Shown here piece by piece: positions 5,201-62,970 of a DNA stretch of 64,000 nt. Position 1 is the stretch's first letter; each line of letters starts with the position of its first letter. The stretch lies in NCBI GenBank assembly GCA_002269645.1, contig NIVC01002716.1:13450-77449 (forward strand), in the 5' to 3' direction. The translations under genes and the position numbers were made by a program. Under the pieces are notes generated by a model. The model saw only the letters and a program-made list of their open reading frames with translations, searched no databases and was not told the origin of the DNA. The DNA is from Macrostomum lignano (Eukaryota).

Positions 5201-6716
5201 GAGCCACCATGTCAAATATAAAACAGCCACCATTTCGAAAATTTAAGAGCCGCCATGTTAAACATTAAAGGGCCACCTTGTCAAATATTAAAGAGCCACC
5301 ATTTCAAACCTAAAAGAGCGACCCTGTCGAACATACAAGAGCCACAATGTCGAACATAAAAGAGCAGCTATGTAGAACATAAAAGAGCCACCATGTCAAA
5401 CATAAAAAAGCCACCATGTCAAACATAAAAGAGCCAACATGAAGAACATTAAAGAGCCACCATGTCGACCATTAAAAGAGCCACCATGTCGAACATACAA
5501 GAGCCACCATGTCGAACATAGAAAAGCCACCATGTCGAACATAGAAAAGCCACCATGTTAAACATTAAAGAGCCAATATTTCAAACCTTAAGGAGCCACC
5601 ATGTCGAACATAAAAGAGTCACCATGTTAAAAATTAAAGAGCCACCATGTCGAACATTAAAGAGCCACCATGTCGAACATTAAAGAGCCACCATGTCAAA
5701 CATAAAACAGACACCATGTCAAACATTAAAGAGCCACCGGTTCAAACCTAAAAGAGCCACCATGTCGAACATTAAAGAGCCACCTTGTCAAATATTAAAG
5801 AGCCACCATTTCAAACCTAAAGGAGCCACCATGTCGAACATTAAAAAGCCACCATGTCGAACATTAAAAAGCCAACATGTCAAACATTAAAGAGCCACCA
5901 TGTCGAACATTAAAGAGCCACCTTGTCAAATATTAAAGAGCCACCATTTCAAACCTAAAGAAGCCACCATGTCGAACATACAAGAGCCACCATGTCGAAC
6001 ATAGAAAAGCCACCATGTCAAACATTAAAGAGTCACCATGTCAAACATTAAAGAGCCACCGTTTCAAACCTAAAAGAGCCACCATGTTAAAAATTAAAGA
6101 GCCACCATGTCAAATATAAAACAGCCACCATTTCGAAAATTAAGGAGCCACCATATCAAACATAAAAGAGTTACCATGTCAAACATTAAAGAGCCACCAT
6201 GTCGAACATTAAAGAGCCACCATATCAAACATAAAACAGACACCATGTCAAACATTAAAGAGCCACCATGTCGAACATTAAAGAGCCACCATGTCAAACA
6301 TAAAACAGCCACCATTTCGAAAATTAAGGAGCCACCATTTCGAAAATTAAAGAGCCGCCATGTTAACCATTAAAGGGCCACCATGTCAAACATTAAAGAG
6401 CCACCATGTCGAACATAAAAGAGCCACCATGTCGAACATTAAAGAGCCACCATGTCAAACATTAAAGAGCCACCGGTTCAAACCTAAAAGAGCCACCATG
6501 TCGAACATTAAAAAGCCACCGTGTCGAACATAAAAAAGTCAACATGTCAAACATAAAAGAGCCACCATGTCAAACCTAAAAAAGCCACCATGTCAAACAT
6601 AGAAGAGCCACCATGTCGAACATAAAAGAGCCACTATGTCAAACATAAAAGAGCCACCATGTCAAACATAGAAGAGCCACTATGTCAAACATAAAAGAGC
6701 CACCATGTCAAACATT
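2300..6716 (+). repeat. 23-bp tandem satellite (consensus AAAGAGCCACCATGTCRAACATT), roughly 190 units, with an 828-bp higher-order duplication
   Basis: 23-aa periodicity in the ORF track; identical ORFs at 4154-4405 and 4982-5233 are offset by 828 bp (36 x 23). Confidence 0.97.
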
Positions 6717-6827
6717 CAAGATATCCAATTTCAAATGTAAAGGTATAAAGCGCCATGCCAATTTAAAGGAGCCACTATAAAGCTAAGGAAATTGTCGCTC
6801 TAGCTACTTATTGTCTGGTGGATGGTT

Positions 6828-41000: not shown

Positions 41001-44000
41001 TGGTTACACAGGTAACAGCACAGGTGGTTACACAGGTAACAGCACAGGTGGTTTCACAGGTAACAGGAGAGGTGGTTACACAGGTAACAGCACAGGTGGT
41101 TACACAGGTAACAGCAGAGGTGGTTACACAGGTAACAGCACAAGTGGTTACACAGGTAACAGCACAGGTGGCTTCACAGGTAACAGCACAGGTGGTTACA
41201 CAGGTAACAGCACAGGTGGTTACACAGGTAACAGCACAGGTGGTTTCACAGGTAACAGCACAGGTGGTTTCACAGGTAACAGCACAGGTGGTTACACAGG
41301 TAACAGCACAGGTGGTTACACAGGTAACAGCACAGGTGGTTACACAGGTAACAGCACAGATAGTTACACAGTTAACAGCACAGGTGGTTACACAGGTAAC
41401 AGCACAGGTGGTTACACAGGTAAAAGCACAGGTAGTTTCACAGGTAACAGCACAGGTGGTTACACAGGTAACAGCAGAGGTGGTTACACAGGTAACAGCA
41501 CAAGTGGTTACACAGGTAACAGCACAGGTGGTTTCACAGGTAACAGCACAGGTGGTTACACAGGTAACAGCACAGGTGGTTACACAGGTAACAGCACAGG
41601 TGGTTTCACAGGTAACAGCACAGGTGGTTACACAGGTAACAGCACAGGTGGTTTCACAGGTAACAGCACAGGTGGTTACACAGGTAACAGCACAGGTGGT
41701 TACACAGTTAACAGCACAGGTGGTTTCACAGGTAACAGCACAGGTGGTTACACAGGTAACAGCACAGGTGGTTACACAGGTAACAGCACAGGTGGTTTCA
41801 CAGGTAACAGCACAGGTGGTTACACAGGTAACAGCACAGGTGGTTACACAGGTAACAGCACAGGTGGTTTCACAGGTAACAGCACAGGTGGTTACACAGG
41901 TAACAGCACAGGTGGTTACACAGTTAACAGCACAGGTGGTTTCACAGGTAACAGCACAGGTGGTTACACAGGTAACAGCACAGGTGGTTACACAGGTAAC
42001 AGCACAGGTGGTTACACAGGTAACAGCACAGATAGTTACACAGTTAACAGCACAGGTGGTTACACAGGTAACAGCAGAGGTGGTTACACAGGTAACAGCA
42101 CAGGTAGTTTCACAGGTAACAGCACAGGTGGTTACACAGGTAACAGCACAGGTGGTTACACAGGTAACAGCACAGGTGGTTACACAGGTAACAGCACAGG
42201 TGGTTACACAGGTAACAGCACAGGTGGTTACACAGGTAACAGCACAGGTGGTTACACAGGTAACAGCACAGGTGGTTACACAGGTAACAGCACAGGTGGT
42301 TACACAGGTAACAGCACAGGTGGTTACACAGGTAACAGCACAGGTGGTTACACAGGTAACAGCACAGGTGGTTACACAGTTAACAGCACAGGTGGTTACA
42401 CAGGTAGCAGCACAGGTGGTTACACAGGTAACAGCACAGGTAGTTTCACAGGTGCCCCATACCCAGCAAGCAGGTGGCCATGCATAGCATGCACAGCGGG
42501 CTCCAAGGCGCCGGGTCCGGCCAAGGCATCCGCAGTGAGGCTGGCCGCGTCGGCCAGGTGTCCGGAGCGGGCCAGCATGCCGGCCAGACAGAGCAGCGGC
42601 ACGTCCCTGTAGTTGTCCGGCGCCAGGAAGATCGCGCGGCGCAGACAATCGACGCTGCGTCTTGGACTGGCTCGGACGCGCCAAAAAGCACCGGCCAGGG
42701 TGAACAGCGCCCACTGCGGGCCGCCCCGGCCGGAGCGCAGGCCAGTCAGCAGGCGCTGTCCGAGATCGTCCAGGTGCATGCGGAGTGACAGGCCGCCAAG
42801 CAGCGGCTCGGCCGGCTCCGGCTGCATGGAAGCAAAGCCGTCCATTGGCTGGCGCTGCTGATGACGGCTGCTGGACGCAGACGATTGCTGGCCCACGGAC
42901 GGGTCGGCGGCCCGGGCGAGTTTCACAGCCTCCAAGTGGTCGCCTGTGAGCCGGCTGGGCTGCGGATCCGGGAACTCGGAGCAGTCTGGCGGATACCTGA
43001 AGTGGCCAAGGCGAATGGAACCAACAGTTGCTAAGGGAAATGCTTTGGAACCAACCGTTGCTAAGGGAAATGCTTTGGAACCAACCTTTGCGAAGGCGAA
43101 TGATTTGGAGCCAACCGTTGCTAAGGGGAATGATTTAGAACCAACCGTTGCTAAGGGGAATGCTCGCTATCACCGGTTTGCTAAGGTGCATTGCCTCGTT
43201 ATTAACGGTTGCTAAGATGCATAGCTTCGCTATCAACGGTTGCTAAGGACCATAGCTTCGCTATCAACGGTTGCTAAGGACCACAGCTTCGCTATCAACG
43301 GTTGCTAAGGACCATAGCTTTGCTTTCAACGGTTGCCAAGGTGCAGTGCTCAGACTTACCAGGGCAGCGGGTGCTCGTCGCCAATCCGAATGCCCAGGCC
43401 GTCAGTCAGCATGGCAACGGATTCGAATCCTTTGTTCTCCAGAGGCACATGCTCCGAAGGCACGGACTGCAGGTCGCTGCCACTGGTCTCGCCGTGGGAT
43501 CTGCACTCGGACGGCGAAGGGAAGGCGCTGGCGTTAACCAGGTAGCGCAGAGCTTCGGGCAGGTCGATTCTTGGTGCTTGGTGCACAGGCGGTCGGCGCG
43601 GCTGGCTGAAGTCCGCCGCCGACGGCTGCAGGCTTGGCGAAGACGCCGAAGACGAGGCGGCGGCGGCGGTCGGTTGAGCGGCTGGCGACAAAGACGGATG
43701 CCGGGCAAGGTACTCCTGGTAGGCGGCCTCTGAGGCTTTACGGGCCTGCGCAGATCCGGCAGAAAAAAATTTCGGATAGCAAAACACTTGCTTACATACC
43801 AATGCTCGCTGGTAGTGGTCTAGGATACTACTGTCCTCTATTACTCATACTTGGGGGAGCTGCGCGAGGAGGGGAGAAGAGGGACGTTAGAGACAGGATT
43901 GGGAACATCGAGAGGAGGGGAGGGAGAGGAAAAGGAGGCAGATGAGGCAGATGAGGAAGAGGGGAGGATGGTAGAAGGGAGAGGATGGGGAGAAGGGAGA

Positions 44001-47470: not shown

Positions 47471-50254
47471 CTATCTATGCATGCACTATTCAATTTCCTA
47501 ACCTAGGCTATAGAGTATATAAAACATGCATATAAATCAAGCATTTTAAAATACAAGTTAAATGAAGAAATAATGATATTTTATAATAAATTTTCTACAA
47601 TAAGTTATATGCGACATATACCAAGTCCAAGGACCTGCAACCATGCAATGTCTATTGTGATATCTATCTCAAATGCATCAGTGACACGGTGACACCTTGT
47701 GAATACCAGATTTATTTAAGGGAAAAGGCCACCTACAATAACTAAATACAATATAGCCTATCATTGCTATATTAAAATGGCTTATCAAGATCTAAAATTA
47801 GGAAAAGGCCTATAGTATAGGCTATAGAGAAAAGTCATACTAGACTTCCACTTAGAGACTTGGAATGTCTCCAATGTCTCCACTTAGAGCATTACAGTGA
47901 CTTTAGCCAATGGATCAAACAATGAAGCTAATATATTATATTAATTAGCTAAAAATTTAAAATATTATATCAAAAATTAAAATGATTGTTTAATTTACCT
48001 ATCGTATAAAATTTGCAACTTTCTTAATTTTCTAAAATTGTTCTATTGCCTTGCTATATAATCTTAATAATATACTTTAGGCCTATTGTTTACTTAATTG
48101 ACTCAAGAGTCAAGAGTCAATATAAAAAGTCAAGAGGTAAAATAAGAAAGAGAGAAGAGAGTGGAATTAGATAGAAAGAAGAGGGATAAAAATAGCTCTA
48201 GGACTGATAGGTCTGTAGGTAAGAAAGTAAGCCACCCCCTTCCTTATTCTCTCTCTACCCAAAACCCTAATCCAGTACGTCGACGGTCGACAAGCGATAA
48301 ATGCATAGTTCTCTGTAAGTTAAAAATGATTGTTGTACGTCGAAACATTTTCTTTGAAACTAGAGCATCATAACAAAACTCTAAGAAAATGAAATCTTTC
48401 GCGTTTTAATAACAAAAATAAAAAAATCACATCAGTTGATTTTAAAACTTTAGTGACCATGTTAGCTTTGAAATATAATAGGAAATAAACGCGGAGATGA
48501 AACCGGAATTATTATGTATTATTTGATACATTAATTAAATGTTTTGTGGTTAAGTAGAAGATTCAGCATCACATGCCTTTTGGGAGCTATTTTAATATTT
48601 TTCCCCCGTAACCCTAGTGGCCCTCGTGATTTACGAGTACCCGAATAACTGCCTCAAAAGCAAATTTATATAATCTCATTCTCATATAAAACATGGATAA
48701 ACATTTTACCATTTTACCATTTTGAATAATTCCAAATATAATCTTGGAGAACGCATATAATGTCTAGGAAATGTTTAAATATATGTTTTATTGAATACAA
48801 TTGTTATGTAAGTCGTTAATAAAAATTCATTTTATATAATATATGTTACTAACGATTACGTTGAACATTTGACGAAAGGACAGCTATCTTGTCTTATGGC
48901 TTAAGCATTGCAATATTAGTGCACTTCGACAGAAAATCAGATAATTAATGTACGATCCGTCCGATAAAAGTAATCCTAAATTGTTGGAATGCATGTACGG
49001 TGGTTCTTCAAAAATATTATGCAATGTCAAACTTTCACGACTACGATTTGTGTGCTTACATGTACATGCATCTTGTACAGCTGCATGGTTACTACGAGTT
49101 CAGAGCTTCTGGTTATTATAGCGCTGTTGTCTAAATGTCATGATTTGGCCAGCCTCCTCATGCCCCCATGCACTATCCATTTGTCTGTAGCGCTGGCTAC
49201 CAAAAGATAAAGATGATTAATTAAGTTGAGCGAAAGGTTAAATTACCTCGGCTGGGGGGCGATCGCGTCTATTTAATAAAAATAAAGTACAGTTAGTTTG
49301 GGGCGGAAACCGAAAGTTGGAGTTTGGGTCATAGACAACCTAGCTTGTGGGCACTCAAAAGAAAGTACTTTTATTACGCAAGGACAGTGGGAAACAAGGC
49401 GCTACATGTGTATGGCCAGAAGCTATCTTCACCAATAACTCGACCGTGCGGTAAATTCCATTGTCTGTGATTGATGGGGAAGTCAACGAAGTGAAAAGTG
49501 CAACGACAATCAAGCTTATATAAACTGCTACAATTTTTATCTGTTGCTAGCTAAAGCCTATTAAAGTTGCAAGTTCAATACATTGATGTTTGATACATGA
49601 AAATAGTGTAATATGTACCCCGACAATTAAGTTCTGGGTTCTGCAAATAAGTTATGAGATATATTTAATTTAGAGATTATATGCATGTGCTGCACATGCG
49701 AACCGCGAATGCGGCGTTCTGAATAAACGATACATTTATAGATTTATTCGTCCCTGTATGGTGCCTGCGCATTGCATGCTTCGTGCAGTACACACGGTAC
49801 GTATCAATTCGATTGAACGAAGTGAGCATCTATACATTTAAAAACACGTTCGAGATTAATAAATTCTGCTCTGTGAAACAGATTCCGTTCAAACCGCTAA
49901 AAACGACTCAAAAATAGATATGATACGCACTCATACTGTACGTGCCTGTGCACATGCTAGAAAATTAACAGACGACACCAGATTTTACGTACTGTACGTA
50001 AGGGTAAAAAAGCTGGGGGCTTTTGTACACGGCCCATACATGTAGGCCACACATGTACACATGTACGTGTACAACTGTACAAATACATGTACATATAAAA
50101 CTTTTATAGCTCGTACAAGTACAATAAAACCGCGAAAATGGATTTATAAAAATATTTGCAGCTCTAAAACTTTTATAAGCTCTTCAAAGCTCTTCAAAGA
50201 AGCGGAGAGTGTGCTAATAAGTTTGAAGTTCAATAAGTTAGCCATTACATGTAT

Positions 50255-52813
50255 TTATTGCTTACGGTATCGTCCAAAGAAGCTGCTGTCAGAGTTCTGC
50301 TTCTGTTGCTGCTCTTCCTGCTGCTGCTGTTGCTGCTGCTGAACTTCTTCATCAATTCGCAGGTTCAAGCTCTCCCTCAGCTTGGTGCAGTCCGCTTTGT
50401 ACTTCTCCTTGTCTGCTCTCTCTTGGGCGAAGTCTCGCTCATAGTCTTTTAAGGTTGACTGCAGCAGATTTTTTGTATCCTCATTTTGTTTCAGCTCCTG
50501 CTGAGCCTCCTCAAGCTTCGCCTGCAGCTGGGTCAGCCTGGTCTCAAGTCTCTTGCATTCGTCCTTCTTGCGACAAATATCCTGCTGCAGCTCTCGGTCC
50601 CCCTGCTCCAGCTGGTCCAAACGGCGCTGCCGCTGTTCCAAGCACTCGCGCATTCGTTCAGCGGTGCTGAGGGCCGAGTCTCGCTGCTGCTGCGCCTGCT
50701 GCACCTGCTCCGCGGTGGACTTGCGCTCCGAGTCCAGCGATGCGCGCAGCTGGCGGATCTGCTCGTCAGCTACCGACCGAGACTGGAAGTGGGAGGGATG
50801 GGAGAGATGTAGGACCATTTTTGTAATTAATGTTTTCCCATGCTATCTTTCGAGGCATCCTTGTGCATCCAAGCCACACCATAAGTCTCAATTTATTATC
50901 ACCTGCTCCGCCTCCTTTCTCTTCCACGTCTCTTCATTCATTCTTTGATAGAGCCGCTCCTCTCGCTGTTTGAGCTCGGCAACGCGAACGTCGTGCTCAT
51001 CGGCCTGAGCCCTATGCCGATCCAGCAGCTCGTCAGCTCTCGCTCGGTAATTATTCTCCTGCAAATGTTGCAGCAGAGAGCAATAAAGTATCTAGGACTT
51101 ATCTATGCAGTTAATTGATGCTCCCTAAGAGTCCTCAGTCAAGAAGCCACCTACGCTTGTGCATGCGCATGTACTTAGAAGCCTAAGTTGTCGAAGTTAA
51201 CGAACACCGTCAACCACCTTACCCTCTCCTGGCAAGCCGACAGCTCTTGCTGCTTGTCAGCAAGTTCCCTCTCGGCTGCAGACAACTTCCGCTGCTTATC
51301 TGCCAGTGAATCTTCTGCAACCGACAGCTTCCGCCGATTATCTGCCAGTGCTTCTTCGGCGGAAGACAGCTTCCGTTGCTTATCTGCCAGTGCTTCTTCG
51401 GCAGAAGACAGCTTCTGCTGCAAATTTGCTTCCGTCTCGGCCAGTTTTTTCTGCAGCCTTCTATCCGACTGTTCCATTTCTTCCAACTTCTTCTGAACTT
51501 CAGTCAGCGACTTTCGCAGCGCCTCCTCGGTGCTTTGTTGCGTGTCCAGCTCTCGCTGCAGCCGTTGGACCTCCTGGCTGGTGGAGGTGGCTCTATCCGA
51601 TGCCTGCTTCAGCTGCTCCTTACAGGCGCTGAGCTTGGCCGCCTTGGTGTCCGCCTCCTTCCGAGCCATGCCCAGCTCGATTGCCTGGCTTTCCTTGGCT
51701 TTGCTGTGAAAAAAATTGAGTGTGAGTTTTAGGTGGACACTTCAGGAACGCTGCTTTAAATAATCAGACTGTAAATAAATCGATGATATGGTAGATTGTG
51801 TCAGATGGTGCATCCTCACCTCAGCAGATTTCGCTCCTCTTTCAGCTCGGCCTCTAGTTTGAGTATCCGATGTTTCAGCCTATCTGACTCGCTACTGCTC
51901 TGCTCTCGCCTGCGGGAAACGGGTGGCTCAATTTTCAGCAATGTTCCGGACATGGTCAGAAATATAGGACTTGAGTAATAAAAAATTCCCAAAAGAGCTG
52001 AGCACCCACTGCGTGTTTCGCTCGGCATTGAATTGTTCCTGCAGCTGCTCCAAGCGCAGGTTCAGCACCACGACTTTGCGATTTGCATCGGCGAGTCTTT
52101 GAAAAGGGTGTCGATATATTATGGAACGTTTAATCGTTATAATCACACATAAAACAAGAGTAAAAACAAAAATGCCCCACTCACTGCTTCTGGAGGTCAT
52201 CATTCGTCGCCTTCAACGCACGAAGCTCTTCGCTCCCGAGCGCAGCTGGAGCTTCTGCTGATGGACGCGCTTCCACGCTTGGCTCGAGCGTACTTTCACC
52301 TTGGGAAGAATCTGACAGGAGCTCGTGCAGGAGGTCTTTGATTTGTAAATCATAATCTGACTTTGTCTTTTCTAACTGATGCTCGGCCTCAGCCAGCTTC
52401 TGATTGAGCTGCTCCAACTCTGCCGCGTGTTTTGCCTTCAAATCGTTCTCGGACTTCAGGTTGAAAGCGCAGATGGCGTCCATCTGCTTCTTGCACGTCT
52501 GCTTCTCCGTTGCCAGCGCCTTCTCATGCTGCTCCACCAGAGCCGCGCGGTCAGCTTGGTGGGAGTTTTGAAGCTGCTCAATTTCAACTCTGTGCTTTTC
52601 CTGCTCAGCAGACAGATCTTCTTTAAACTGAGCGCTCGATTCGTCTCTCTGCTTTTCTAGGGCCTCTGCATGCTGACGTTTGAGCTCGGCGATCTCCAGC
52701 TTCTGCTGCTCAACTACCGCTTCTTGAGTTCGGTTTCGCTCTTCCAGCCTAGCTTTTTCTGCTTTAAAATTCTTTAGCTGAGCAGCCAACTGTTGAATTG
52801 GATTGGCAGTCAT
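50255..52813 (-). CDS. Long coiled-coil protein with a C-terminal UBAN-like motif (NEMO/optineurin/ABIN family-like); 6 exons (52813-52185, 52096-52010, 51909-51820, 51703-51223, 51058-50903, 50782-50255), 656 aa
   Basis: All five GT-AG junctions join in frame (1971 nt). LQSTLKDYERDFAQERADKEKY resembles ABIN2 YKDDFMSERADRERA and NEMO YKADFQAERQARE; five 14-aa internal repeats in exon 4; polyQ tail. Confidence 0.8.
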
Positions 52814-53513
52814 GGTTGTACTTGTTGAAGGGTGGTCAGGCAATCAAGTTTTATGTAGCGAGCTCAAATTCAGCTACCTGTCCTACTCAAATATTCAGTT
52901 TTCGCTTTAAAATATTTGGTTATTTTGTAACCAATTCCCCAAACGAGAATTGAGGGACCTACAAGGCACTAAAAGCAGAGTAGCTTCGTATGCTTTTTAC
53001 GTCATAAAATTTTCTGGAAATAAGGTACTGTCTCAGTACAGCAAGCAAGCACTGCACTTCATTGGTCTGAGAGCGCGCATAAGCAAAGCCACAAGAAGTG
53101 TACTTCTTGCGCGGAGAACAGCCGAGTGTACACTGGTCCCGTCTGTTTCCAATTTAACGCACTGCTAAATGTACACACCTAGCCCGAGGACTGTACTGTT
53201 TTAGTGCCTTGTTTCTGCATTGCTGCATTGCGCGGAAAACTCACTGGTTTAAACTGGTGCCATTCTCCCTCCTTTTTGATAAACAGATCTGAAGTGTAGT
53301 TCGCGGGTCGGCTATCGATCAAACACATTTTAGTTGAATTCGGGTTGTGAAATATAAAAAATTGGTTTTGGGAGGCAGGATGCCATACATGACTTTTTCA
53401 TGAATAGATGCTGGATATACTGAAACTGCAGCTAAGCTTGCTCTTTCTCTGAATTAAAAATTTATATAATTACTTAATTAATATACAATTAATATTCAGC
53501 TATAGCGCGGCGC

Positions 53514-53736
53514 ATCTGAAGGCTGCATACGGCTGTTCAGTCCAAGGACTGGGGGTCGCCACACACACCTTCAATTACCCCAGCTAATGCTGGCACCCAT
53601 TTTACAGCTGAGTGAACTGAAGCAATGCAGAGTTACGTGTCTTGCTCAAGAACACAAATTGTTCCAGTGGGATCAGGAATCGAGCCACCGACTTTCAAGT
53701 CGGGAGTCCGACGCTCTGACTACTAGGCTACAATCC
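53514..53736 (-). mobile_element. tRNA-derived SINE (same family as 39595-39829)
   Basis: Reverse complement aligns along its whole length with the 39595 copy. Confidence 0.9.
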
Positions 53737-54156
53737 TCTCCCCCGAACTTAGCTCTTCCCCGAACCAGGGAAGCAAACCATTAGTTCGGGACCGAGAAGG
53801 AAGCCTCGAACTAAACCATTTAAATTCATCTCAGGATACCTCATCGTACTAACGCGGTCTTTGCTAGCAGACGCGCTGTTTCGTACATGATTTTTATGTC
53901 AGGAAGTAGTTCTGCCAAGCTCCACAAGTACATTTTTTTATAATTTATCAACTGACATCAACTGCGTCCACTACGCAGTTCTATTAATAGCCATTACCGG
54001 CGCGGCCTCCCCGCGGCAAGGCCGTGGAACGGCTACGGAGATTCCGGGCTAAGCGCCAACAAACAGCTGTGGCTTGGAGTGAGCCGAGTCGGTACTTTGC
54101 AACTGCAGCACCCTGATCACCAATCTGCCTAATCCATTCTGATGTGAACGAGAAAA

Positions 54157-56272
54157 ATGAGTGAGTAGATTCCATACTAGCTATCAAATGCTGGCAAAGT
54201 TTGGGATGCATATATCATCAATCTGCCTTTTAACACATCAGCATTATGCAAAACTTCGTATTAAATGCCTCAATAATAACTAAACTGAACCTTCAGCAAT
54301 TTACCTGGTTGCCAATGGTAAATCGAAGAGTGACTTCAAAGACCTCCTGCAGGATCATCTAATCAGGGAGAAGCTGACCGTTAGCATTGAAAGATCGTGG
54401 CCAGAAAGTGCAGAGCAATGGATGGAGCTGCTGGAAGACGTCAAAGCCGGAGAGGACAACCTGCTGGTGTTGATCTTTAACAGAGCTCCGGACAGTGAGA
54501 GTAATTTGACCAGAATCTGCAGCTTTGTCATGGACTTGGCAAGTTCATTCAATTGCGTTTACAATGCATATTCGTTTTGCTGTGCACAGCATCAACCCGA
54601 CTGGTTGAATCAACGCTCTGCTTTTTAGTGTGTGGAACTTCGAAGCTGCAGAGTTTACCTGGTTAAACAATTCAAAGACTGCGGCAACAATGCCTTCAAA
54701 GTGAACAGACGAGCTAGGAAAATGCTGCAGTACCTTGACCTGGAGGCTGAGAGTGGAAGCCATCTCAGATTGGTCGAAGCTATTAAAAAAGGTAAGAATT
54801 ACGACTTCCTCGGAGATTAAAATTAGGAGAAAATGCGATATGGGAGAACGGGTTTCTATTTTCACTTGCACAGGTCCTGGCAGCTTCAGCAGTCGCGGGG
54901 AGAGCTTTGCCTGGCAGCTGGTGACCGGATTTCTCTGCCACATCCTGCCGCTCCTTTCCCAGCGGGTCAGCAGTCAGCTGGCCGATAAAGCGGGCACCGC
55001 TCTGCCGGAGGCTTTACGAAGATTCAATGCAAAAGGCGTGGATGCCAGACGGGTTCTCGTTGTGCCAAAGTACTTTCTGCTGCTCAGCAAACCGGTTGCT
55101 TGCGGCCAGAAACAGGCGGAACTGTGCCCCGATCAGCTGTTCCCCGGCTGCCAGAAAATCAGCGACTGGTCGTCCGAGCTGGAGTTTGACAGTCCCGGAT
55201 TCAAGAAGCGAATTCCGGTGTACCTGACCGAGCTGAGAGAGCCACTGCCAAGCGGACACACCCACGCCATGATCTTCTGCGGATTTGCCGCGCCCATCTT
55301 CATCATGCGGCAGCTGGAGCTCAGCAAAAATGAGCGGGGAGAAATATTTGACGACTTCGTATGCGAACTGAGTTACATTCTGAGTCACCCAAGCTCAAGC
55401 CAGCTGTTCTGCGACTTGGGTGGAGCAGCCACGGGGGCCACGGGCTCGGAGTCCTCGACAGTCAGCCTGATAGAGCTGGCCGGCACGGGCGGTGATTCCA
55501 TAAGAAATCAAGTTTTGGAACGAATCGACGAGTACTTGGAGAAGCGGGACTGGGATGCTTGCGACGATTTAAGAGACGAATGGGTCCTCGTTACTTCTTT
55601 GATGAATTTATCCGTAAAATTCAGCTCGTCCTCGTTACTTCTTTGATGAATTTATCCGTAAAATTCAGCTCGTCCTCGTTACTTCTTTGATGAATTTATC
55701 CGTAAAATTCAGCTCGTCCTCGTTACTTCTTTGATGAATTTATCCGTAAAATTCAGCTCGTCCTTCACAACCGAAGTAAAGAGCTCTGTCCGCAACTGGC
55801 TTTCAAGACTTGGCTTCAGAACTAACGAAACTGCGGTTGACTCGCCACTGCTTCCGAGCCAGAGAGTTCTGCTACTGCTGCATATCCAAGATCTCGAGTC
55901 AAATGACGAGCGTATGCACACCCAAATTCGACATGCTGTTGAGAATGTAGGCAGCTCAGTTCAAGCTGAAATGTCACGTTGACAACCCAATTAGACCTTT
56001 CGCTTGGCTGATGCTCTCGAGCTTTAACTTTTCAGATGCATCGCAGTGATTGCCAAAACATTTTCGTCATCATAGAGACAGCTCCAGGAGAGCACCAGGC
56101 TGCCTTCAAATCCCTGCCGAACATTCTGCGGTGCCTTCCTGACAAATGCACAGCCGCGGTGACCGGCTTGAAACAGCTGAGCTCGCTGAATTTTTCGTTC
56201 CCTGATGGAACTCAACGCCTGGCAGGGTTTAGCGATCTGATCAAAGCTTTTAGTAAGATTTTAAACTTCTAG
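54157..56272 (+). CDS. TIR-like / STING ligand-binding domain / TIR-like protein; exons 54157-54160, 54297-54538, 54629-54791, 54874-55946, 56036-56272; as assembled, truncated at 55646 by a 44-bp quadruplication
   Basis: STING motifs SFAWQLVTGFLCHILP (cf. GLAWSYYIGYLRLILP), GFKKR (GIKDR), FAAP (YATP), LSKNERGEIFDDFVCELSYIL, SIRNQVLERI. N-terminal MTIYLV..FKDLLQDHL..LTVSI..LLVLIF..RVYLV..QYLDL shows a TIR-like alpha/beta pattern. Intron 2 requires a GC-AG donor. Confidence 0.75.
55584..55764 (+). repeat. 44-bp exact tandem repeat x4 inside the STING gene's coding exon
   Basis: GTCCTCGTTACTTCTTTGATGAATTTATCCGTAAAATTCAGCTC at 55584, 55628, 55672 and 55716. Confidence 0.98.
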
Positions 56273-56277
56273 GAATC

Positions 56278-56428
56278 CAGGGGCTTTAGCACCAGGGGCT
56301 TTAGCACCAGGGGCTTTAGCACCAGGGGCGCCAGCACCAGGGGCGCCAGCACCAGGGGCGCCAGCACCAGGGGCGCCAGCACCAGGGGCGCCAGCACCAG
56401 GGGCGCCAGCACTAGGGGCCCAGCACCA
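56278..56428 (+). repeat. 15-bp tandem (CAGGGGCKYYAGCAC)n just after the STING-gene stop
   Basis: About 10 copies in two variants. Confidence 0.95.
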
Positions 56429-57164
56429 AAGTAGTTGTTGGGGAACTGCTAAAATTTATAGCCAGTTTTTCGCCTGTATTTCTGGGGAGTGGAGGCCCCT
56501 CTTGGTGCCTTGGCAACGCCCATGAGATATGTTGATGAGCATTAAGATCTCAAGGCATTCCATTTCAGAGCTGGACTCGAAACCGGACTGTGCAGATGAA
56601 TGTCTGCCTTTGACTTCCATGAGCTTCGCAATGGCGGCCAACTGTTGGTTCGGCTTTGCGAATCGATTGCTGCTGAGTGAGTTGAAACTTAATAATATAC
56701 ATCGAATACACTCGCAATAATAAGAATAGTAATAATAATTATTATTATTCGATTTAAGATTAAAATTTCGGGTCTCAAAGCCATTAAGTCTTGAGTCAAT
56801 GGGCAAAACACCTTGTCCTCTGAGTAAGATTTTTTAAAATCGAAACTTTATCCGATATTTCTTGTTCAAACTTATCACGGGAGCACTAGGAAATTTCCCG
56901 CTGCACTTAAAAAGGAACTGAACTTCACTTTCTACCCCGCATGGCATTTCGGGCAGGTCTTCTTCTTCTCGTAAGGGATCTTTGGTCTCGCAGTCCTTGT
57001 TTCGCTAATCTAAGCGGTGACAGGGTGCGATTTAATTCTGGATTGGAAATTTCCAGGGCATACCTTTTGACTAAGTTGCATCAGTAGTATAGAATAAGGA
57101 CAGAATTAAGTCTTGAACTCAGTTTAATTAAATTCTAAAGTCAGCATATGTTGAATATAGCTCG

Positions 57165-57580
57165 TACGGTGTGGCACCGCCTCCGGCCTGCTCCACCCCG
57201 CCTCCGGCCTGTCCCACCCTGCCTCCGGCCTGTCTCATCCTGCCTCCGGCCTGTCCCACCTTGCCTCCGGCCTGTCCCACCCTGCCTCCGGCCTGCCCCA
57301 CCCTGCCTCCGGCCTGCCCCACCCTGCCTCCGGCCTGTCCCACCCTGCCTCCGGCCTGTCCCACCCTGCCTCCGGCCTGTCTCATCCTGCCTCCGGCCTG
57401 TCCCACCCTGCCTCCGGCCTGTCCCACCCTGCCTCCGGCCTGTCCCACCCTGCCTCCGGCCTGTCCCACCCTGCCTCCGGCCTGTCCCACCCTGCCTCCG
57501 GCCTGCCCCACCCTGCCTCCAGCCTGTCTCATCCTGCTTGCCTCCGGCCTGCCCCACCCGCCTCCAGCCTGTCCCACCCC
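57165..57580 (+). repeat. 21-bp minisatellite (CCTGCCTCCGGCCTGTCCCAC)n
   Basis: Direct reading. Confidence 0.95.
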
Positions 57581-57715
57581 GCCTTCAGGGCCTCCCTCTC
57601 ACTGATTGGCCAGCAGACAATCAGCGACGTGGGCCAGACCCCACCATTTTCCTACGTTTATATCGATTTTGGTAAGCTTAAATATTTACGGCCAGCATGC
57701 CCAATAATTCCAGGC

Positions 57716-58180
57716 ATGAACGCCAGCACCGGCCGAAATTCAAAGCCGATGTTCGATCCGCCCTACTGCTTTGTGATCCCATCAAGCGGCCGGTTTCCCG
57801 ACGAAAACCAACTCTACGATCAACTGTACAGCATTGGCGTCCGCTGGAGCGTTTCGGAATTCCGGCTGGAAGGCAGACGCTTCACATTTCGCGTGCACCG
57901 ATGGGGCGACGTCAGCATTGCATTCGAAGTGCCCGCGTCGGTGCTGTCGATACATCGACAGGCCGACAGTCGCATCGGCGGCGTCCGAGCGAAGAGTTTG
58001 AGCAGCCAGCTGGCCGAGTTCGGCGCAGAGCTGGACAAGTACTGCGCAAATAGCGGCGGCTGGTTTCGAGTGATTCGGTGGGATGACAGCGTCTTGAGAG
58101 TTGGCGCAGAATGCCCTGACTTGAGCCGGGTAGAAAGTCTTATGAGCTGCCTGGGAGAAGCGTGCAGTATCCGCCCGTGA
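57716..58180 (+). CDS. Uncharacterised 154-aa protein, possible RRM-like plus KH-like modules
   Basis: Non-repetitive GC-rich ORF; ATG preceded by a 42-bp GT-AG intron (57672-57713); alternating beta/alpha hydrophobic pattern. Confidence 0.55.
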   Translation: MNASTGRNSKPMFDPPYCFVIPSSGRFPDENQLYDQLYSIGVRWSVSEFRLEGRRFTFRVHRWGDVSIAFEVPASVLSIHRQADSRIGGVRAKSLSSQLAEFGAELDKYCANSGGWFRVIRWDDSVLRVGAECPDLSRVESLMSCLGEACSIRP

Positions 58181-58315
58181 AGCATGTTGTTTAGGGAACT
58201 TTTCACTTCACTTGGTGTTTTAGGAGCGTTCAAGTTTTGTTTATTTAGGGTACTGAGACAGACAGGGGCATCCGCAGCTCTGTTGACTTTCATCAACCCA
58301 CACAAACAGCATCAA

Positions 58316-58560
58316 ACCGCATCCCGTTTCTCATCCCGTTTCTCATCCCGTTTCTCAACCCGTATCTCATCCCGTATCTCACCCCGTTTCTCACCCCGTT
58401 TCTCACCCCGTTTCTCAATCCGTTTCTCATCCCGTTTCTCATCCCGTTTCTCATCCCGTTTCTCATCCCGTTTCTCATCCCGTTTCTCATCCCGTTTCTC
58501 AACCCGTATCTCAACCCGTATCTCACCCCGTATCTCATCCCGTTTCTCAACCCGTATCTC
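58316..58560 (+). repeat. 12-bp tandem (TCTCATCCCGTT)n
   Basis: Direct reading. Confidence 0.95.
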
Positions 58561-59039
58561 ATAAGTTTGCTCAGTTACAAGTATTCGATTATGACAACTT
58601 TGTGTTTCTTAGGGTTTACAGTAGTCTGTCTGTATTCACTGGTCCATAGGGCGAAGACAATGTGTACATAATTAATTTTTGACATCCCACGCCAAAAACT
58701 AAACTGGAATGTATTCAGAAATACATGCAAATAGTATAGTAAAAACTATATATAATGATTTGATATCATTCTGTAACTATTGAGGTTTTATGCTACTTTT
58801 ATCGTACTCATATTTGAGTCGATTCAAAGAGTAGCATGAAAAAGTTACTGGTCTTGTCGATTTTCTTATTAAACTACATGTACTGCATGTATCGAGAGGA
58901 CTTCCAATTTGACTAGACGGGTCCTTGGCTACAACTGTGCATCCCATCATATCTACCAATGAAACCTTCAGTAAACTGCAGTCCCGAGAGACTGACAACA
59001 CAAAGACAAAGGCATTAAAGTCCCGAACAGACAGACACT

Positions 59040-59230
59040 ACACTTCGAAACTTCACAATAGCATTCCGGCACGCTCAAGGCTTGTCTCTTCTCAGCTCTG
59101 CTCTCTCTTCTCTCCTCTCTTCTCTCCTCCATCATCTCTTTCACCTCATCAATGCTTTCATCTCCTTTGTCTTCTCTTTCATCTCTCCTCTTATCTCATA
59201 TCTCATCTATTTTCTCATCTCATCACCTTT
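59040..59230 (+). mobile_element. Partial copy of the Charlie-like MITE family (27907 / 34688)
   Basis: CCGGCACGCTCAAGGCTTGTCTCTTCTCAGCTCT matches the reverse complement of 35685-35720, followed by a pyrimidine tract. Confidence 0.7.
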
Positions 59231-60776
59231 AGCAAGATATATCGCTCTTGAAAATCGCTATCCTTTGTGTCGTAATCCAAAATATCTTTCCAAGAGTATT
59301 TTTTGCGATTTTTTCCTTTCGTAGTTTTTTCTTCTTTCCGATTGACCCCACCACTAAAGATTTTAGCCACGCTTAAAACAGAACCAAATATAAATGTGAA
59401 ACCCCCACAACTTCTAAAAGTATATCTCCCACCAGCGCCTTATCATCGCAAACCACGAGTCAAAGCAGGCAGTGTCGCCACTTAGGAGCGGACATCGCCT
59501 ACACCGCCCATCATCTACAGTTGAAAACCGCAGCTCACGCAATGAATGTTTAACTTTTGGAAGAGAAAGAAGTCACATGGTTCCACGTCAGATGAATGCT
59601 GTTGGCTGTTTAACTAGAGTCCTTGCGTCTCCAAGAACCATAGCCTTTGTCTGCTCGTTCAGTAGCACCGAAGCGCCACGTGAGCCGAGGTAACTGGAGA
59701 TCATCCTCTTTCTGTGCTTCTGTTCTGCCTCATCTGGACTCGGGCTCGTAGCAGTAAGGTAGCTCGGTCGCAAGTCACAATGATAGCGACTACATTTGAG
59801 ACACCTGGCAACTGGTCAGCTTGTGCGGGCCGATGTTATCATGCCTCTATATTTAGTCTCTTGATTCGTTCTTCGCTTGTGATCTTCCACCAGCTGTTGG
59901 ACACGAGCCAATGTTTTAAATCCTGAGGCAGCTTCTTCCCGTCTTCCAAGGAGTCTTGGCCAGGTCAAAACTCCCTGCGGTTGCTAATTGTGAAGTAGAA
60001 CCTACACAAGCCACTGACTCTTTCGTGGCACCGTCAGGTAGGGAGGGTGTGCGATGTTAAAACTGCCCGAGCGGGCGAATATTATATTTTCTTGAAGTTT
60101 CAGGAGTCCGTACAAAAAAAGATGTATTTTTCTAGCGGCGATAGGAAGAATACCATAGGAAAAGAGGTATAAGCGAGGCTAAAAACTTTTATTGTGCCAC
60201 TTGTTATAACCAAAATGCTTTTAAAACACGTTAAAATATTTTCGTATTTTCACAAAAAAAATATTGCTATTGCTGCATTGCAATGCCTTTCAATTCGATC
60301 TTGGTCAAAATAAAATTAACCAGCACATTCCATTTTTGGGTTTGCCAAACCTTTTATCGTCCGAAGTTAAAATGGAATTTTCAGGTGTATCACATACATT
60401 ATGGGAAAATCTGACCTTCTGCATGCCAGAATTGTTGAATATCTCGACGATCCTTTTAGTCAGTCAGGTTTTGAGTGCTCTTACAGCTGGGAGTTCACGA
60501 ATCCTAATGGCCTCTAACAGCCGGTTGTCAACAAGTCAATATACGAGTACCTCTATTCTAACTGCACACAGCTTGGCAAGAATATCAATCATACATGTAT
60601 TTGAAGATGAAGAGTTTAATGGGAGCTGTTCCAGATCGTGTCAGTCAATTTGGTAAGTTATCATAATTGCCAGGCTGTATAAATACAAGCTGAATTTGAT
60701 AGCCTAGAGTTGCGCAGATCCGATAGGGCCCGGAATACAAAACAGTCAGTCTGGCAGCAGCACATCTGAGTAGGGC

Positions 60777-62446
60777 ATGCGGCGCACCTTCATTTGGATC
60801 TTCGCCTGGCTCTGCATCAGAACTGTGGAAGACGCCGGAGCTGTTTCTGTTGACTCGGCCCAGAAGCGCTTTGTCCTGAGTGAGAACTCGATTGTACTCG
60901 GAGATCGGGTGAGCAGCTTCTTGGTCTCCATCACGATGACTCTGGGCCTTCAATGCTTCACCGAATGCTCCAGGCTGGGCTGCGCAGCCGTCAAGATGAG
61001 CGTCGCAGCGGGACGGTGCGAGCTGCTGCTGTTGCACGACGCTTCGAAGCCGGGCCGAGCAGAGCTGGCTGGCACTTTCAAGCACCGGACACTGAGCGTG
61101 GAGACCGGCTGGCTGCTGTGGAAGACGGCCGACTTTGAGGAGCTGCTGAAGCTCAGTACCTTTCCACGACTGTTGGTTGTCAATCGTGAGTACTTCAAAC
61201 ATTTGAGATTTTTAGGGTTTTCTATTTCGAACCGTCAGTGAGTAGCCTCTGCCTATCTGTGAACTTGGAGCTCTAATGAAATGATACATGTCCCTGTACC
61301 GGTGGCTTTCATTGTTACACATCCGGGGATAGTTCCTGAGTTTGGGTTTTTCAAGCTTCTCAGTCGTTAACCGGCTTATAACAACCCTAAGGTCGTGCCC
61401 CAAATCAGTTGATCTATCTAATAACAAGTAAGATTTCTGCATAAAAAAGCAAGTTCGCCATGCTACTGTCCGCAGCCTCACCTGGAAATGGATCAATCGA
61501 GAGCTTTCTGGTCGTCTGGGCGGCTCGTTTGGTGTATCGCTGCCTGCTACCGAATCGAGGCCCGAGGTGGCAGGGGCGGCTCCACCTATCCAGGGAGGAG
61601 TCTCTTCACAGGCGGCAGACGGGCCTTCATGGCAGGCACGTTTAACCTCACTGCCGGCTCCAGGCTCTCCATTGTTGTCGGACGGCGGGGCGGCGATGCG
61701 TCTCAGAACGAAGACTTCGCCGGCTCAGGCGGCGGCGGCGGCTCGTTTGTGTACGCGGAGGGAGCCGGCATGCCGCTGCTTGTGGCAGGAGGGGACGGCG
61801 GTGGCAATAAAGACTCTGAAGGTTGGTGTCTTCTGTTATGCTACATGTACCGGCTGACCCGCGCATCAATTCCTGTCTAATAGCTTTCAGTTGTGCCATT
61901 TTGATGACCCAAAAGGTCCCGCTATTGAGATAAAGACACTGTTCTACGCTTTTAATGCTTGACAGGTAAACCCGGCAGAAATGGAACCAGCGGCAGCACG
62001 TCAGCTGTGGAGAATGAGGAGCAAACCGGCTTCGGTGGTTCTGATGGGTATCCGGGCTTCCTTCATCCCAGTGTTCTCCCGGAGATTCCAAGTACATTTG
62101 GTGGCATGGGAGCCGGCTGGTTCGGCAAGGCGAACATTTCGTGGAGACGTGTCGATGGCGGACCTGGTGGCAGCCGGCTTGACGGCTGGGTTGGCGGGAC
62201 CGGAGGCCTCGGCAACCCTGGCGCCATCGGTGGATTCGGTGGCGGTGGGGGCGGTGGGGAGTCTCCCGGCGCCAGTGGCGGCGGCGGAGGCTTCAGCGGT
62301 GGCGGTGCGGGTTTCGGTGGTGCGGCGGCGGCGGCGGAGGCTCCTACTGCGGCGGCAGCGACTGCGTCGGAGTGACCGGTGGCAACACGAAAGGGGAGCA
62401 CGGCTCGGTTGCCATGGAGATTCTGCTCGGCGCTGTTTGCAATTGA
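60777..62446 (+). pseudogene. Secreted PAN/Apple-like plus ALK/LTK-type glycine-rich-domain protein; exons 60777-61185, 61476-61821, 61966-62446; two apparent frameshifts (about 61515-61540 and about 62322)
   Basis: Signal-like N-terminus; QCFTECSRLGCAAV..GRCELL (PAN); YRIEARGGRGG..GTFNL..LSIVVG..GSGGGGGSFV..PLLVAGG; the canonical ending GGGGGSYCGGSDC..GGN..GSV lies in a shifted frame. Confidence 0.7.
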
Positions 62447-62970
62447 GGTCTAGTGTTCAACTAGATTAGCTACTTTAACAAAGAGGTCCACGGTTGCGAA
62501 CAAATGAATTGATTGTTTATTTTAAAAATATTCACCAAGTAAACAAATAACAAATAGATTGATTAAACTTGAAACTAAAGTCCAAAATTATATTCAGCAA
62601 GCATTCAAAAAGTATTAAACAGCTTTAAGAATTCACTTATACTGATTTCTCACGAATCTACAAAATCGAAAATCAAACCTCAAAGCAGAAAAGACCGACC
62701 AGGACGCAGTCTAGACTGAAAGAAACTAAAAAAGTTGACTTTGATCTACTGTCTCTCGTGAAAATCAAAGCGACAGTACTATAGAGAACCCCTCAACAAG
62801 CAACGAGGCAAAAAGCAGATACGCCCACTTCGTTGACCCCTAAGCACATGGATACGCACACGCGCTCACATAGGATGCACAGCGGCCTTGACTTTCCCTT
62901 CGTCAGCAGTATAATAATCGTAATAATAATGTATTATAATTTATTACAACCGCAGCTATTTGCGCGTAGC

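What the first reader, a model, noticed from the sequence alone, without database searches (positions are those of the whole stretch)
54157..56272. Divergent TIR-STING-TIR gene: a STING receptor with no TM domain, flanked by two TIR-like domains
Seen: a spliceable gene (ATG+A micro-exon, then in-phase junctions) encoding MTIYLVANGK.. (alpha/beta TIR-like, about 135 aa), then a STING C-terminal domain (FAWQLVTGFLCHILP, GFKKR, FAAP, FVCELSYIL, SIRNQVLERI), then a second alpha/beta domain (EWVLVTSL..VRNWLSRLGF..RVLLLLH..IRHAVEN|MHRS..NIFVIIE..LPNILR). Known: TIR-STING fusions occur in bacterial CBASS (Cap12) and in some invertebrates (oyster, annelid); from my recollection STING was reported absent from the flatworms surveyed. 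Inference: a soluble cyclic-dinucleotide receptor with a TIR-STING-TIR architecture, which I do not know to be described.
Basis: partly seen in the sequence, partly recalled or inferred. Interest (0 to 1): 0.92.

Follow-up and report, generated by a model that had tools for sequence, protein, structure and literature searches.

The report
Flatworm tandem TIR-like/STING gene, truncated copy
This is a real Macrostomum lignano gene from a small flatworm-only family of soluble proteins with two STING-type domains, each preceded by an alpha/beta (TIR-like) domain; standard domain searches miss it, and this copy is cut short by a 132-bp repeat expansion inside an exon.

Summary
The gene is real. The window is Macrostomum lignano contig NIVC01002716.1.

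Two things were missed.
1. A perfect 44-nt x 4.1 tandem repeat (55584-55764) sits in the coding exon and puts a stop at 55644-55646. The annotated product is 393 aa.
2. "SKILNF*" is intron read-through. The gene continues to 58180 and encodes a second STING-like domain. An intact paralog (PAA63807.1, 712 aa) shows the layout: alpha/beta N, STING-1, alpha/beta M, STING-2, with no TM segment.

Evidence by domain:
- STING-1 matches canonical STING by profile-profile comparison (P 6e-5; 0 of 200 shuffles).
- An AlphaFold model of M+STING-2 hits oyster TIR-STING 6wt7 (E 1e-9) and bacterial TIR-STING over both domains.
- Pfam, PADLOC and PDB sequence searches find no TIR or STING.
- The N domain is not shown to be TIR.

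The family is M. lignano-only in 1.8 billion proteins and is tandemly expanded. Oysters are reported to have a class with two TIR and two STING domains. I rate this a very divergent variant of spiralian TIR-STING. It is the likely receptor for M. lignano cGLR signals, but its function is untested.

The parts
54157..54160 (+). Exon 1: ATG plus one base (A), donor gtgagt
   Evidence: It gives MT.. as in PAA55732.1. The annotated CDS start in L001 maps to window 54157.
54297..54538 (+). Exon 2: first part of the N-terminal alpha/beta domain (TIYLVANGK...VMDL); GC-AG intron follows (gcaagt)
   Evidence: The junction MDL|CVEL is identical in PAA55732.1 and PAA63807.1.
54629..54791 (+). Exon 3: second part of the N-terminal alpha/beta domain (CVELRS...EAIKKG)
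54874..55583 (+). Exon 4, first part: STING-like domain 1 (S1; SFAWQLVTGFLCHILP ... SIRNQVLERIDEY)
   Evidence: Profile against PDB: all 60 hits are STING. hhalign against a STING CTD alignment: P 6.3e-5, 137 columns, 25% identity; 0 of 200 column shuffles reach the score.
55584..55764 (+). Perfect 44-nt tandem repeat, 4.1 copies, inside the exon. It adds 132 nt relative to the intact paralog and brings stops into frame.
   Evidence: 100% matches; the same 4 exact units are in the second locus L002, and only one unit is in the intact paralog L003.
55644..55646 (+). Premature stop codon of the annotated 393-aa product (...SSSSLLL*)
   Evidence: (ORF 54735..55646).
55716..55946 (+). Exon 4, remainder (last repeat unit onward): first half of the middle alpha/beta domain M (VLVTSLMNLSVKF...HAVEN). 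It is in frame only if 132 nt, or a 99/123/129-nt cryptic intron, are removed.
   Evidence: Aligns to PAA63807.1.
56036..56252 (+). Exon 5: second half of domain M (MHRSDCQNIFVIIE...DLIKAF); donor A|gtaaga at 56252/56253
56569..56676 (+). Exon 6: linker and helix alpha1 of STING-like domain 2 (LPLTSMSFAMAANCWFGFANRLL)
57714..58180 (+). Exon 7: rest of STING-like domain 2 (S2) and the stop codon
   Evidence: AlphaFold model plus Foldseek hits to STING and TIR-STING structures.

Best explanation
The locus is one of three near-identical copies, in the partly duplicated DV1 genome of Macrostomum lignano, of a gene from a small, fast-evolving, flatworm-restricted family.

The family's full-length proteins are soluble and have no TM segment. 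They are built as alpha/beta domain N, STING-like domain S1, alpha/beta (TIR-like) domain M, STING-like domain S2. That is two TIR-STING-like modules in one chain.

In this copy, a recent 3-unit expansion (132 bp) of a 44-bp segment inside the exon, at the start of domain M, introduces stop codons. The annotated product is therefore a 393-aa N+S1 protein. The downstream exons (M+S2) are still intact.

Mechanism (inferred, not shown). Cyclic dinucleotides made by M. lignano cGAS-like receptors bind the STING domains. Binding drives closure or oligomerisation, which brings the TIR-like domains together. These then act either as NAD+-consuming effectors, as in bacterial TIR-STING, or as TIR-type signalling scaffolds. 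S2 keeps the residues universally used for ligand contact: G-F for G166-Y167, R for R238, F/Y for Y240, and E for E260. S1 keeps only part of them, so S1 and S2 probably have different roles.

Shown here: gene structure, the repeat, the truncation, STING homology of S1, the STING fold of S2, the TIR-STING-like two-domain fold of M+S2, and family restriction and expansion.

Inferred: ligand binding, the link to cGLRs, and TIR activity.
For: Gene model and identity to GenBank proteins.

Repeat and truncation.

S1 is a STING homolog:
- The profile of 3 paralogs hits only STING chains in the PDB (60 of 60; best is Nematostella 5cfl, E 0.044).
- hhalign against 15 verified STING CTDs gives score 37.4 and P 6.3e-5. 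It is colinear from alpha1 to alpha3. The shuffle null is 14.3 +/- 2.4 with maximum 21.7.

M+S2:
- AlphaFold pLDDT is 62.6, with secondary-structure elements in the STING order.
- Foldseek top hit is oyster TIR-STING 6wt7, E 1.2e-9 over 366 columns. Next are bacterial TIR-STING 9lmq/9lmr (about 350 columns), then 80+ STING CTDs with target-normalised TM-score (TMt) 0.53-0.62.

No TM segment: maximum Kyte-Doolittle 19-residue hydropathy (KD19) 1.46.

Family:
- Only 3 representatives among 1.84e9 proteins, all from M. lignano.
- At least 5 tandem paralogs lie on NIVC01000486.1.

Context:
- M. lignano cGLRs exist and were cloned by Li et al..
- TIR-STING is known in other Spiralia, namely oyster and Capitella.
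- An oyster class with 2 TIR and 2 STING domains is reported.
Against: - No Pfam STING_LBD or TIR hit even at E<=10, no PADLOC hit, and no phmmer hit in the PDB.
- The S2 sequence signal against STING is weak (P 0.043; 4 of 200 shuffles reach it).
- S1 and S2 show no detectable similarity to each other.
- The AlphaFold model of N+S1 is poor (pLDDT 37.8). Its Foldseek hits are not significant, although STING ranks first (E 0.035).
- The N and M profiles find no TIR in the PDB.
- The alignments behind the models hold only 3-4 sequences.
- S1 lacks the E260 equivalent, and one paralog lacks the lid Arg.
- No binding, expression or activity data were available here.
Confidence: 0.6

Rival explanations
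1. One reading: a 528-aa TIR-STING-TIR protein that ends at 56272 (SKILNF*).
For: The reading frame stays open from 56036 to 56272. A 528-aa protein can be assembled if 132 nt of repeat are dropped.
Against: - A consensus donor (A|gtaaga) lies at 56252.
- All full-length paralog and allele models splice there into KLDSKPDC... and continue for about 205 aa.
- Those downstream exons are conserved across the 30-40%-identical paralogs.
- The model also ignores the in-frame stops of the repeat.
Confidence: 0.04
2. This copy is a broken allele on the way to becoming a pseudogene. The minisatellite expansion destroys the protein after S1, and the 393-aa product is inactive or at most a decoy.
For: - There are stops in frame.
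- GenBank annotates 393 aa at both repeat-bearing loci.
- Against its near-twin L002, the window copy has 0 changes in the codons before the repeat (1-373) and 5 after it. Two of these are window-specific amino-acid changes, K502N and Q558L.
- The genome is rich in young minisatellites. An intact copy exists elsewhere, L003.
Against: - The downstream exons have no stop or frameshift in either repeat-bearing locus.
- The repeat is 100% perfect and therefore very young.
- An in-frame 99-nt cryptic intron could rescue the frame.
- A TIR-like+STING protein of about 370 aa is a complete, known type of receptor (oyster; 6wt7 is 331 residues).
Confidence: 0.35
3. The repeat is removed by splicing as a newly created intron, so this copy still makes a full-length protein of about 716-724 aa.
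For: - The unit holds a donor-like TCC|GTAAAA and an acceptor-like AAATTCAG|.
- Donor to acceptor two units apart is 99 nt, in frame, and gives an 11-aa insertion with no stop.
- Other introns of the gene are 82-136 nt.
- An ab initio model (A0A1I8HHQ4) splices GTTACT..TTCAG here (DEWVL|LVLV).
- The downstream exons are intact.
Against: - The RNA-seq-guided GenBank model reads straight through the repeat.
- The candidate donors are weak compared with the gene's real ones (gtgagt, gtaaga).
- The insertion would fall in strand betaA of domain M.
Confidence: 0.15
4. The STING-fold domains no longer bind cyclic dinucleotides, and the family does something else, such as scaffolding or another ligand.
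For: - Extreme divergence: no Pfam hit.
- S1 lacks the E260 and T263 equivalents, and in paralog P0007 the lid Arg.
- A non-immune, lipid-metabolic role of STING has been proposed as primordial (PMC13572491).
Against: - S2 keeps all universally conserved contact positions, and they are invariant in the three paralog groups.
- M. lignano has cGLR genes.
- Tandem expansion fits an immune family.
Confidence: 0.2
5. The flanking alpha/beta domains are generic flavodoxin-like domains, not TIR domains. This applies above all to the N-terminal one.
For: - No TIR, TIR_2 or SEFIR hit in Pfam.
- The N and M profiles find no TIR in the PDB.
- N, M and the extra domain of P0007 are not detectably similar to one another.
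- The N model is of low confidence.
- The BFVD hit of M with the highest target-normalised TM-score (rank 8) is a flavodoxin-like NrdI, not significant.
Against: - M+S2 aligns over both domains to three independent TIR-STING structures. The E-values are about 1e4 better than for STING alone.
- UniProt auto-names one allele "SEFIR domain-containing", and SEFIR is a relative of TIR.
- The non-significant hits of the N+S1 model include plant TIRs.
- The position in front of STING is the same as in known TIR-STINGs.
Confidence: 0.3

Closest known systems
Metazoan TIR-STING of Spiralia (Crassostrea gigas TIR-STING, PDB 6wt7; also Capitella teleta), including the oyster class annotated with two TIR and two STING domains
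   Same: - Soluble, with no TM domain.
- An alpha/beta (TIR) domain sits directly N-terminal to a STING ligand-binding domain.
- It is the best structural match of the M+S2 model (E 1.2e-9, both domains).
- The host is also a spiralian.
- A doubled TIR/STING architecture is reported in oyster.
   Different: - Sequence is so divergent that Pfam STING_LBD and TIR models do not fire, whereas oyster proteins are annotated by them.
- The two STING domains of one chain are unrelated at sequence level.
- Some paralogs lack the middle domain (S1 directly followed by S2) or carry an extra N-terminal alpha/beta domain.
- TIR identity of N is unproven.
- This copy is truncated by a repeat.
Bacterial CBASS TIR-STING effectors (Sphingobacterium faecium type; PDB 9lmq/9lmr)
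   Same: Two-domain TIR-STING fold match over about 350 columns (E 2e-8 to 1e-5). Soluble. By analogy, ligand-driven oligomerisation activating TIR.
   Different: - Eukaryotic, intron-containing gene.
- No adjacent CD-NTase gene in the stretches examined: 6 kb flanks at this locus, 10 kb at the paralog cluster.
- Doubled module.
- No evidence for the catalytic Glu or for NADase activity.
- According to Culbertson & Levin, animal TIR-STINGs arose by convergence, not by descent from bacterial ones.
Canonical animal TM-STING (human STING/TMEM173, Nematostella STING)
   Same: - S1 aligns to the ligand-binding domain from helix alpha1 to alpha3: GLAWSYYIGYLxxxLP with SFAWQLVTGFLCHILP, DRAGIKDR with DSPGFKKR, EYATP with CGFAAP.
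- S2 has the same order of secondary-structure elements and the Y167, R238, Y240 and E260 equivalents.
   Different: No transmembrane domain, no C-terminal tail motif, two STING domains per chain, and about 12-25% identity.

Membership tests
STING ligand-binding domain (Pfam PF15009 STING_LBD) | Significant match to the curated family HMM | tested here: not met
   hmmscan against Pfam-A at E<=10 gave no family for the 528-aa model, for P0004, P0002, or for the isolated S1 and S2. phmmer against the PDB gave none.
STING ligand-binding domain | Profile-level homology to bona fide STING CTDs (domain S1, 54874-55583) | tested here: met
   hhalign of the 3-paralog profile against 15 STING CTDs (Pfam-annotated hits of a verified human query): P 6.3e-5, 137 columns. 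0 of 200 column shuffles reach the score, z about 9.6. All 60 PDB hits of the profile are STING.
STING ligand-binding domain | STING fold (long alpha1, beta1, beta-hairpin lid, beta4, alpha2, alpha3, beta5, alpha4) for domain S2 (56569-58180) | tested here: met
   AlphaFold model pLDDT 62.6, with S2 mostly 60-83. Foldseek gave 91 PDB hits at E<=1e-3, and all 50 listed are STING or TIR-STING, with target-normalised TM-score (TMt) up to 0.62. Element order is mapped. The model is of moderate confidence only. The sequence signal is weak.
STING ligand-binding domain | STING fold for domain S1 | tested here: inconclusive
   The model of N+S1 has pLDDT 37.8. STING chains rank 1-3 in Foldseek, but with E 0.035-0.25.
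STING ligand-binding domain | Universally conserved ligand contacts (aromatic pair stacking on the bases; lid arginine), as defined in Li et al. 2023 | tested here: inconclusive
   By the hhalign alignment:
- S2 has F (Y167), R613 (R238), F/Y615 (Y240) and E630 (E260), all conserved in 3 paralog groups.
- S1 has F156 (Y167) and R249 (R238, but T in P0007). The Y240 equivalent is uncertain, and it has G in place of E260.
The S2 alignment is of low significance.
STING ligand-binding domain | Binds cyclic dinucleotide as a dimer | not testable with these tools
   Needs recombinant protein.
TIR-STING fusion receptors (oyster 6wt7; bacterial CBASS TIR-STING) | TIR domain immediately N-terminal to STING in one soluble chain | tested here: inconclusive
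   M+S2 aligns over both domains to 6wt7 and 9lmq/9lmr (340-366 columns, E 1e-9 to 1e-5), and there is no TM segment. However, the TM-score is about 0.33 overall, and no sequence evidence shows that M or N is TIR.
TIR domain (Pfam PF01582/PF13676; SEFIR PF08357) | Match to family HMMs or to TIR sequences | tested here: not met
   No Pfam hit for N or M at E<=10. The profiles A7 and A8 against the PDB gave no TIR. PADLOC gave none. There is only an automatic UniProt name "SEFIR domain-containing" for one allele, and its basis could not be checked.
TIR domain (enzymatic NADase subclass) | Catalytic glutamate after betaC and a BB-loop; NAD+ cleavage | not testable with these tools
   Conserved acidic residues exist (DLE after the central strand of M; P-x-E region in N). 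They cannot be placed on a TIR active site without a confident structure.
Canonical metazoan TM-STING | N-terminal 4-helix transmembrane domain | tested here: not met
   The maximum 19-residue Kyte-Doolittle hydropathy is 1.46, and no window exceeds 1.6, in the 713-aa protein.

The most novel reading that the evidence does not exclude
The two very different STING domains of one chain (S1 and S2) pair with each other to form a single-chain, asymmetric pseudo-dimer with one ligand pocket. It would be tuned to an asymmetric cGLR product, and closure would bring the two TIR-like domains together. Paralogs in which S1 is joined to S2 by only about 25 residues would be the minimal form. The truncated 393-aa product of this locus would then be a half-receptor, either a regulator or a decoy.
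Probability: 0.2. Interest if true: 0.8.

Novelty: new variant of a known kind. Interest (0 to 1): 0.6.

Why it matters
Surveys of cGAS-like receptor/STING signalling list flatworms as largely lacking the pathway. The cestodes surveyed have 0 cGLR and 0 STING genes, and M. lignano is not in the count table. Yet M. lignano cGLRs exist and were cloned for biochemical screening.

This family is the obvious missing receptor. It escapes Pfam-based surveys, so similar hidden STINGs may exist in other lineages called STING-less.

Its doubled module with two unlike STING domains, its tandem gene expansion, and a natural truncation allele make it a compact system for two questions:
- How do soluble TIR-STING receptors signal in animals?
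- Can a STING dimer be built from one chain?

M. lignano has transgenesis and RNAi, so these questions can be tested.

Tried and rejected
- Pfam hmmscan of the whole protein and of each domain at E<=10 gave nothing.
- PADLOC gave nothing.
- phmmer against the PDB gave nothing.
- The word-indexed homolog search found only two M. lignano clusters, both with the single sequence and with a 4-sequence profile.
- Exhaustive phmmer against 1.84e9 representatives found 3 proteins, all M. lignano. No deeper alignment could therefore be built.
- The S2 profile against the PDB gave no STING.
- S1 against S2 by hhalign showed no relation.
- N against M against the extra P0007 domain showed no relation.
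- The N and M profiles against the PDB gave no TIR.
- AlphaFold of N+S1 was too poor to use (pLDDT 37.8), and its Foldseek hits were not significant.
- Foldseek of M+S2 against viral structures (BFVD) gave nothing significant.
The 99%-identical paralog was modelled instead.
- An assembly artefact as the cause of the repeat was rejected. Two separate contigs, 98.6% identical in the flanks, carry the same 4 exact units.
- Literature searches for STING in Macrostomum found nothing relevant.
Full report
WHAT IS THERE

The window is Macrostomum lignano DNA. Window 48157-61646 is 100% identical to GenBank contig NIVC01002716.1 (assembly Mlig_3_7, GCA_002269645.1).

It continues with these exons:
- 54297-54538, followed by a GC-AG intron (gcaagt)
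- 54629-54791
- 54874 onward

Translated as the DNA stands, this gives a 393-aa protein identical to GenBank PAA55732.1/PAA90963.1 (P0003). The GenBank annotation of this assembly was derived from RNA-seq-guided transcript models with TransDecoder ORFs (PMC5730564). The unusual micro-exon and the GC donor therefore have at least that support. I could not inspect reads myself.

First, a perfect tandem repeat lies inside the long exon at 55584-55764. It has a 44-nt unit, 4.1 copies and 100% matches.
- An intact paralogous locus (L003, NIVC01001813.1) has one copy of the unit. The window therefore carries a 132-nt expansion.
- Because 44 is not a multiple of 3, the second unit is read in another frame and gives stops. 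The ORF ends at 55646 with ...SSSSLLL*.
- The expansion is not an assembly artefact. A second contig (L002, NIVC01000099.1), 98.6% identical in the flanks, has the same four exact units.
- The window is full of minisatellites. This is the only one scoring at least 200 with 100% identity, so it is the youngest.

- The donor A|gtaaga at 56252 joins to 56569-56676 and then to 57714-58180.
- With the 132 nt removed, the window encodes a 713-aa protein that is 99% identical to PAA63807.1 (P0004, 712 aa), the product of the intact locus.
- The downstream exons have no stop or frameshift in either repeat-bearing locus.

WHAT THE DOMAINS ARE

The domain layout, in the numbering of the 713-aa protein, is:
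- N: about 1-137, alpha/beta
- S1: about 138-370
- M: about 371-512, alpha/beta
- S2: about 525-713

Direct searches fail. There is no Pfam family at E<=10 for the whole protein or for any domain, no PADLOC family, and no PDB sequence by phmmer.

The family is tiny. An exhaustive phmmer search of 1.84 billion representative proteins gave three hits. All three are encoded in the M. lignano assembly.

S1. A profile of the three paralog groups hits 60 PDB sequences at E<=10. All are STING; the best is Nematostella 5cfl at E 0.044, and only helix alpha1 is aligned.
- I used it to collect Pfam-annotated STINGs from mammals to lamprey and a hemichordate, and compared profiles.
- S1 against STING gives score 37.4 and P 6.3e-5, with 137 colinear columns and 25% identity.
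- 200 column-shuffled controls gave 14.3 +/- 2.4 with maximum 21.7.
- S1 is therefore a genuine, very divergent STING ligand-binding domain.
- Its AlphaFold model was too poor to add anything (pLDDT 37.8; STING ranks first in Foldseek, but at E 0.035).

M+S2.
- S2 has the STING order of elements: long alpha1, beta1, a helix, a beta-hairpin, beta4, alpha2, alpha3, beta5, alpha4.
- The Foldseek top hit is oyster TIR-STING 6wt7 (E 1.2e-9, 366 columns).
- Bacterial TIR-STING 9lmq/9lmr follow (about 350 columns, E 2e-8 to 1e-5).
- Then come STING domains of sea anemone, oyster, human, cattle and duck, with target-normalised TM-score (TMt) 0.53-0.62.
- Two-domain targets align over their whole length and score about 10^4 better than STING alone. 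That is the evidence that M occupies the place and general fold of the TIR domain.
- By sequence, S2 is only weakly STING-like (P 0.043; 4 of 200 shuffles reach it). The alignment nevertheless places family-invariant residues on the universally conserved contacts named by Li et al.: G-F on G166-Y167, R613 on R238, F/Y615 on Y240, and E630 on E260.

N and M as TIR. No sequence method supports this. M has the structural support above. N has only a beta-alpha pattern, its position in front of a STING domain, and non-significant TIR hits.

There is no transmembrane segment.

THE FAMILY

There are three architectures:
- this gene: N-S1-M-S2
- P0006: N-S1-S2, with S1 joined to S2 by about 25 residues
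- P0007: two N-type domains, then S1-M-S2

P0006, P0007 and at least three further copies or fragments lie in tandem on contig NIVC01000486.1. A lineage-restricted, tandemly expanded, fast-diverging family is what one expects of an immune gene family. This last point is inference.

HOW IT MOST LIKELY WORKS

By analogy with TIR-STING receptors, cyclic dinucleotides bind the STING domains. Ligand-driven closure and oligomerisation bring the TIR-like domains together. These either cleave NAD+ (the bacterial model) or nucleate TIR-type signalling.

A ligand source exists. M. lignano cGLRs such as PAA86972.1 are in the set cloned by Li et al.. The same paper says most platyhelminths lack immune cGLRs, and its cGLR/STING count table shows 0/0 for cestodes and does not list M. 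lignano.

S2 looks competent for ligand binding. S1 has lost part of the pocket.

The most novel reading not excluded is that S1 and S2 pair within one chain.

STATUS OF THIS COPY

There are three possibilities:
(a) It makes the annotated 393-aa N+S1 protein. That is about the size and layout of a complete single TIR-STING.
(b) It is a decaying allele.
(c) The repeat is spliced out. A donor-like TCC|GTAAAA and an acceptor AAATTCAG| two units apart define a 99-nt, in-frame intron that would leave an 11-aa insertion.

Against its near-twin L002, the window copy has no change in the codons before the repeat (1-373) and five after it. Two of these are private amino-acid changes. This is a weak hint of relaxed constraint downstream.

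COMPARISON WITH WHAT IS KNOWN, AND NOVELTY

- Soluble TIR-STING is known in bacteria and, rarely, in animals: oyster and Capitella, both spiralians like flatworms.
- UniProt automatically names this very 393-aa protein "Stimulator of interferon genes protein".
- No paper in the library links STING and Macrostomum.

The finding is therefore not a new kind of system. It is a strongly divergent variant: undetectable with Pfam, with two mutually unrelated STING domains per chain, a variable domain count among paralogs, and here a natural truncation by a minisatellite.

Noticed in passing
window 56277-56428, 57179-57584, 58320-58562: Minisatellites lie in the two last introns (15-nt x 10; 21-nt x 19) and just after the stop codon (12-nt x 20) of the same gene. 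They create long spurious ORFs on both strands.
   Followed up: partly
window 50255-52843 (- strand): The divergently oriented neighbour gene is annotated as a 656-aa product with no Pfam hit. Its ORFs are glutamine/glutamate-rich and look like coiled coil. The same neighbour accompanies all three copies of the STING gene.
   Followed up: no
window 2301-6721 and 39850-42453: Two very large satellite arrays: 23-nt unit x 192 copies and 24-nt unit x 108 copies. Many smaller arrays explain the strong GC and skew swings of the window.
   Followed up: no
L004 10001-21973 and L005 10001-25418 (contig NIVC01000486.1): A tandem cluster of at least five paralogs or fragments of the same family. It includes isolated S1-S2 units and a lone S2 fragment. 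The UniProt model A0A1I8FUI7 (P0002) appears to fuse the tail of one paralog to the next.
   Followed up: partly
window 55716-58180 compared with L002 and L003: The window copy has private changes after the repeat (K502N, Q558L, two synonymous). It has none before the repeat relative to L002. This may reflect relaxed constraint on the untranslated part, or gene conversion.
   Followed up: partly
window 61488-62469 (+ strand): Glycine-rich ORFs (GGGGG/GGSG runs) downstream of the gene. They may be a glycine-rich protein gene or just repeat-derived ORFs.
   Followed up: no
UniProt names of alleles (P0001, P0002, P0005): Automatic names differ for near-identical proteins or paralogs: "Death domain-containing", "SEFIR domain-containing", "HECT domain-containing". 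No Pfam hit here backs any of them; P0001 and P0005 were not scanned themselves, but the 712-aa protein of their 90%-identity cluster (P0004) was.
   Followed up: partly
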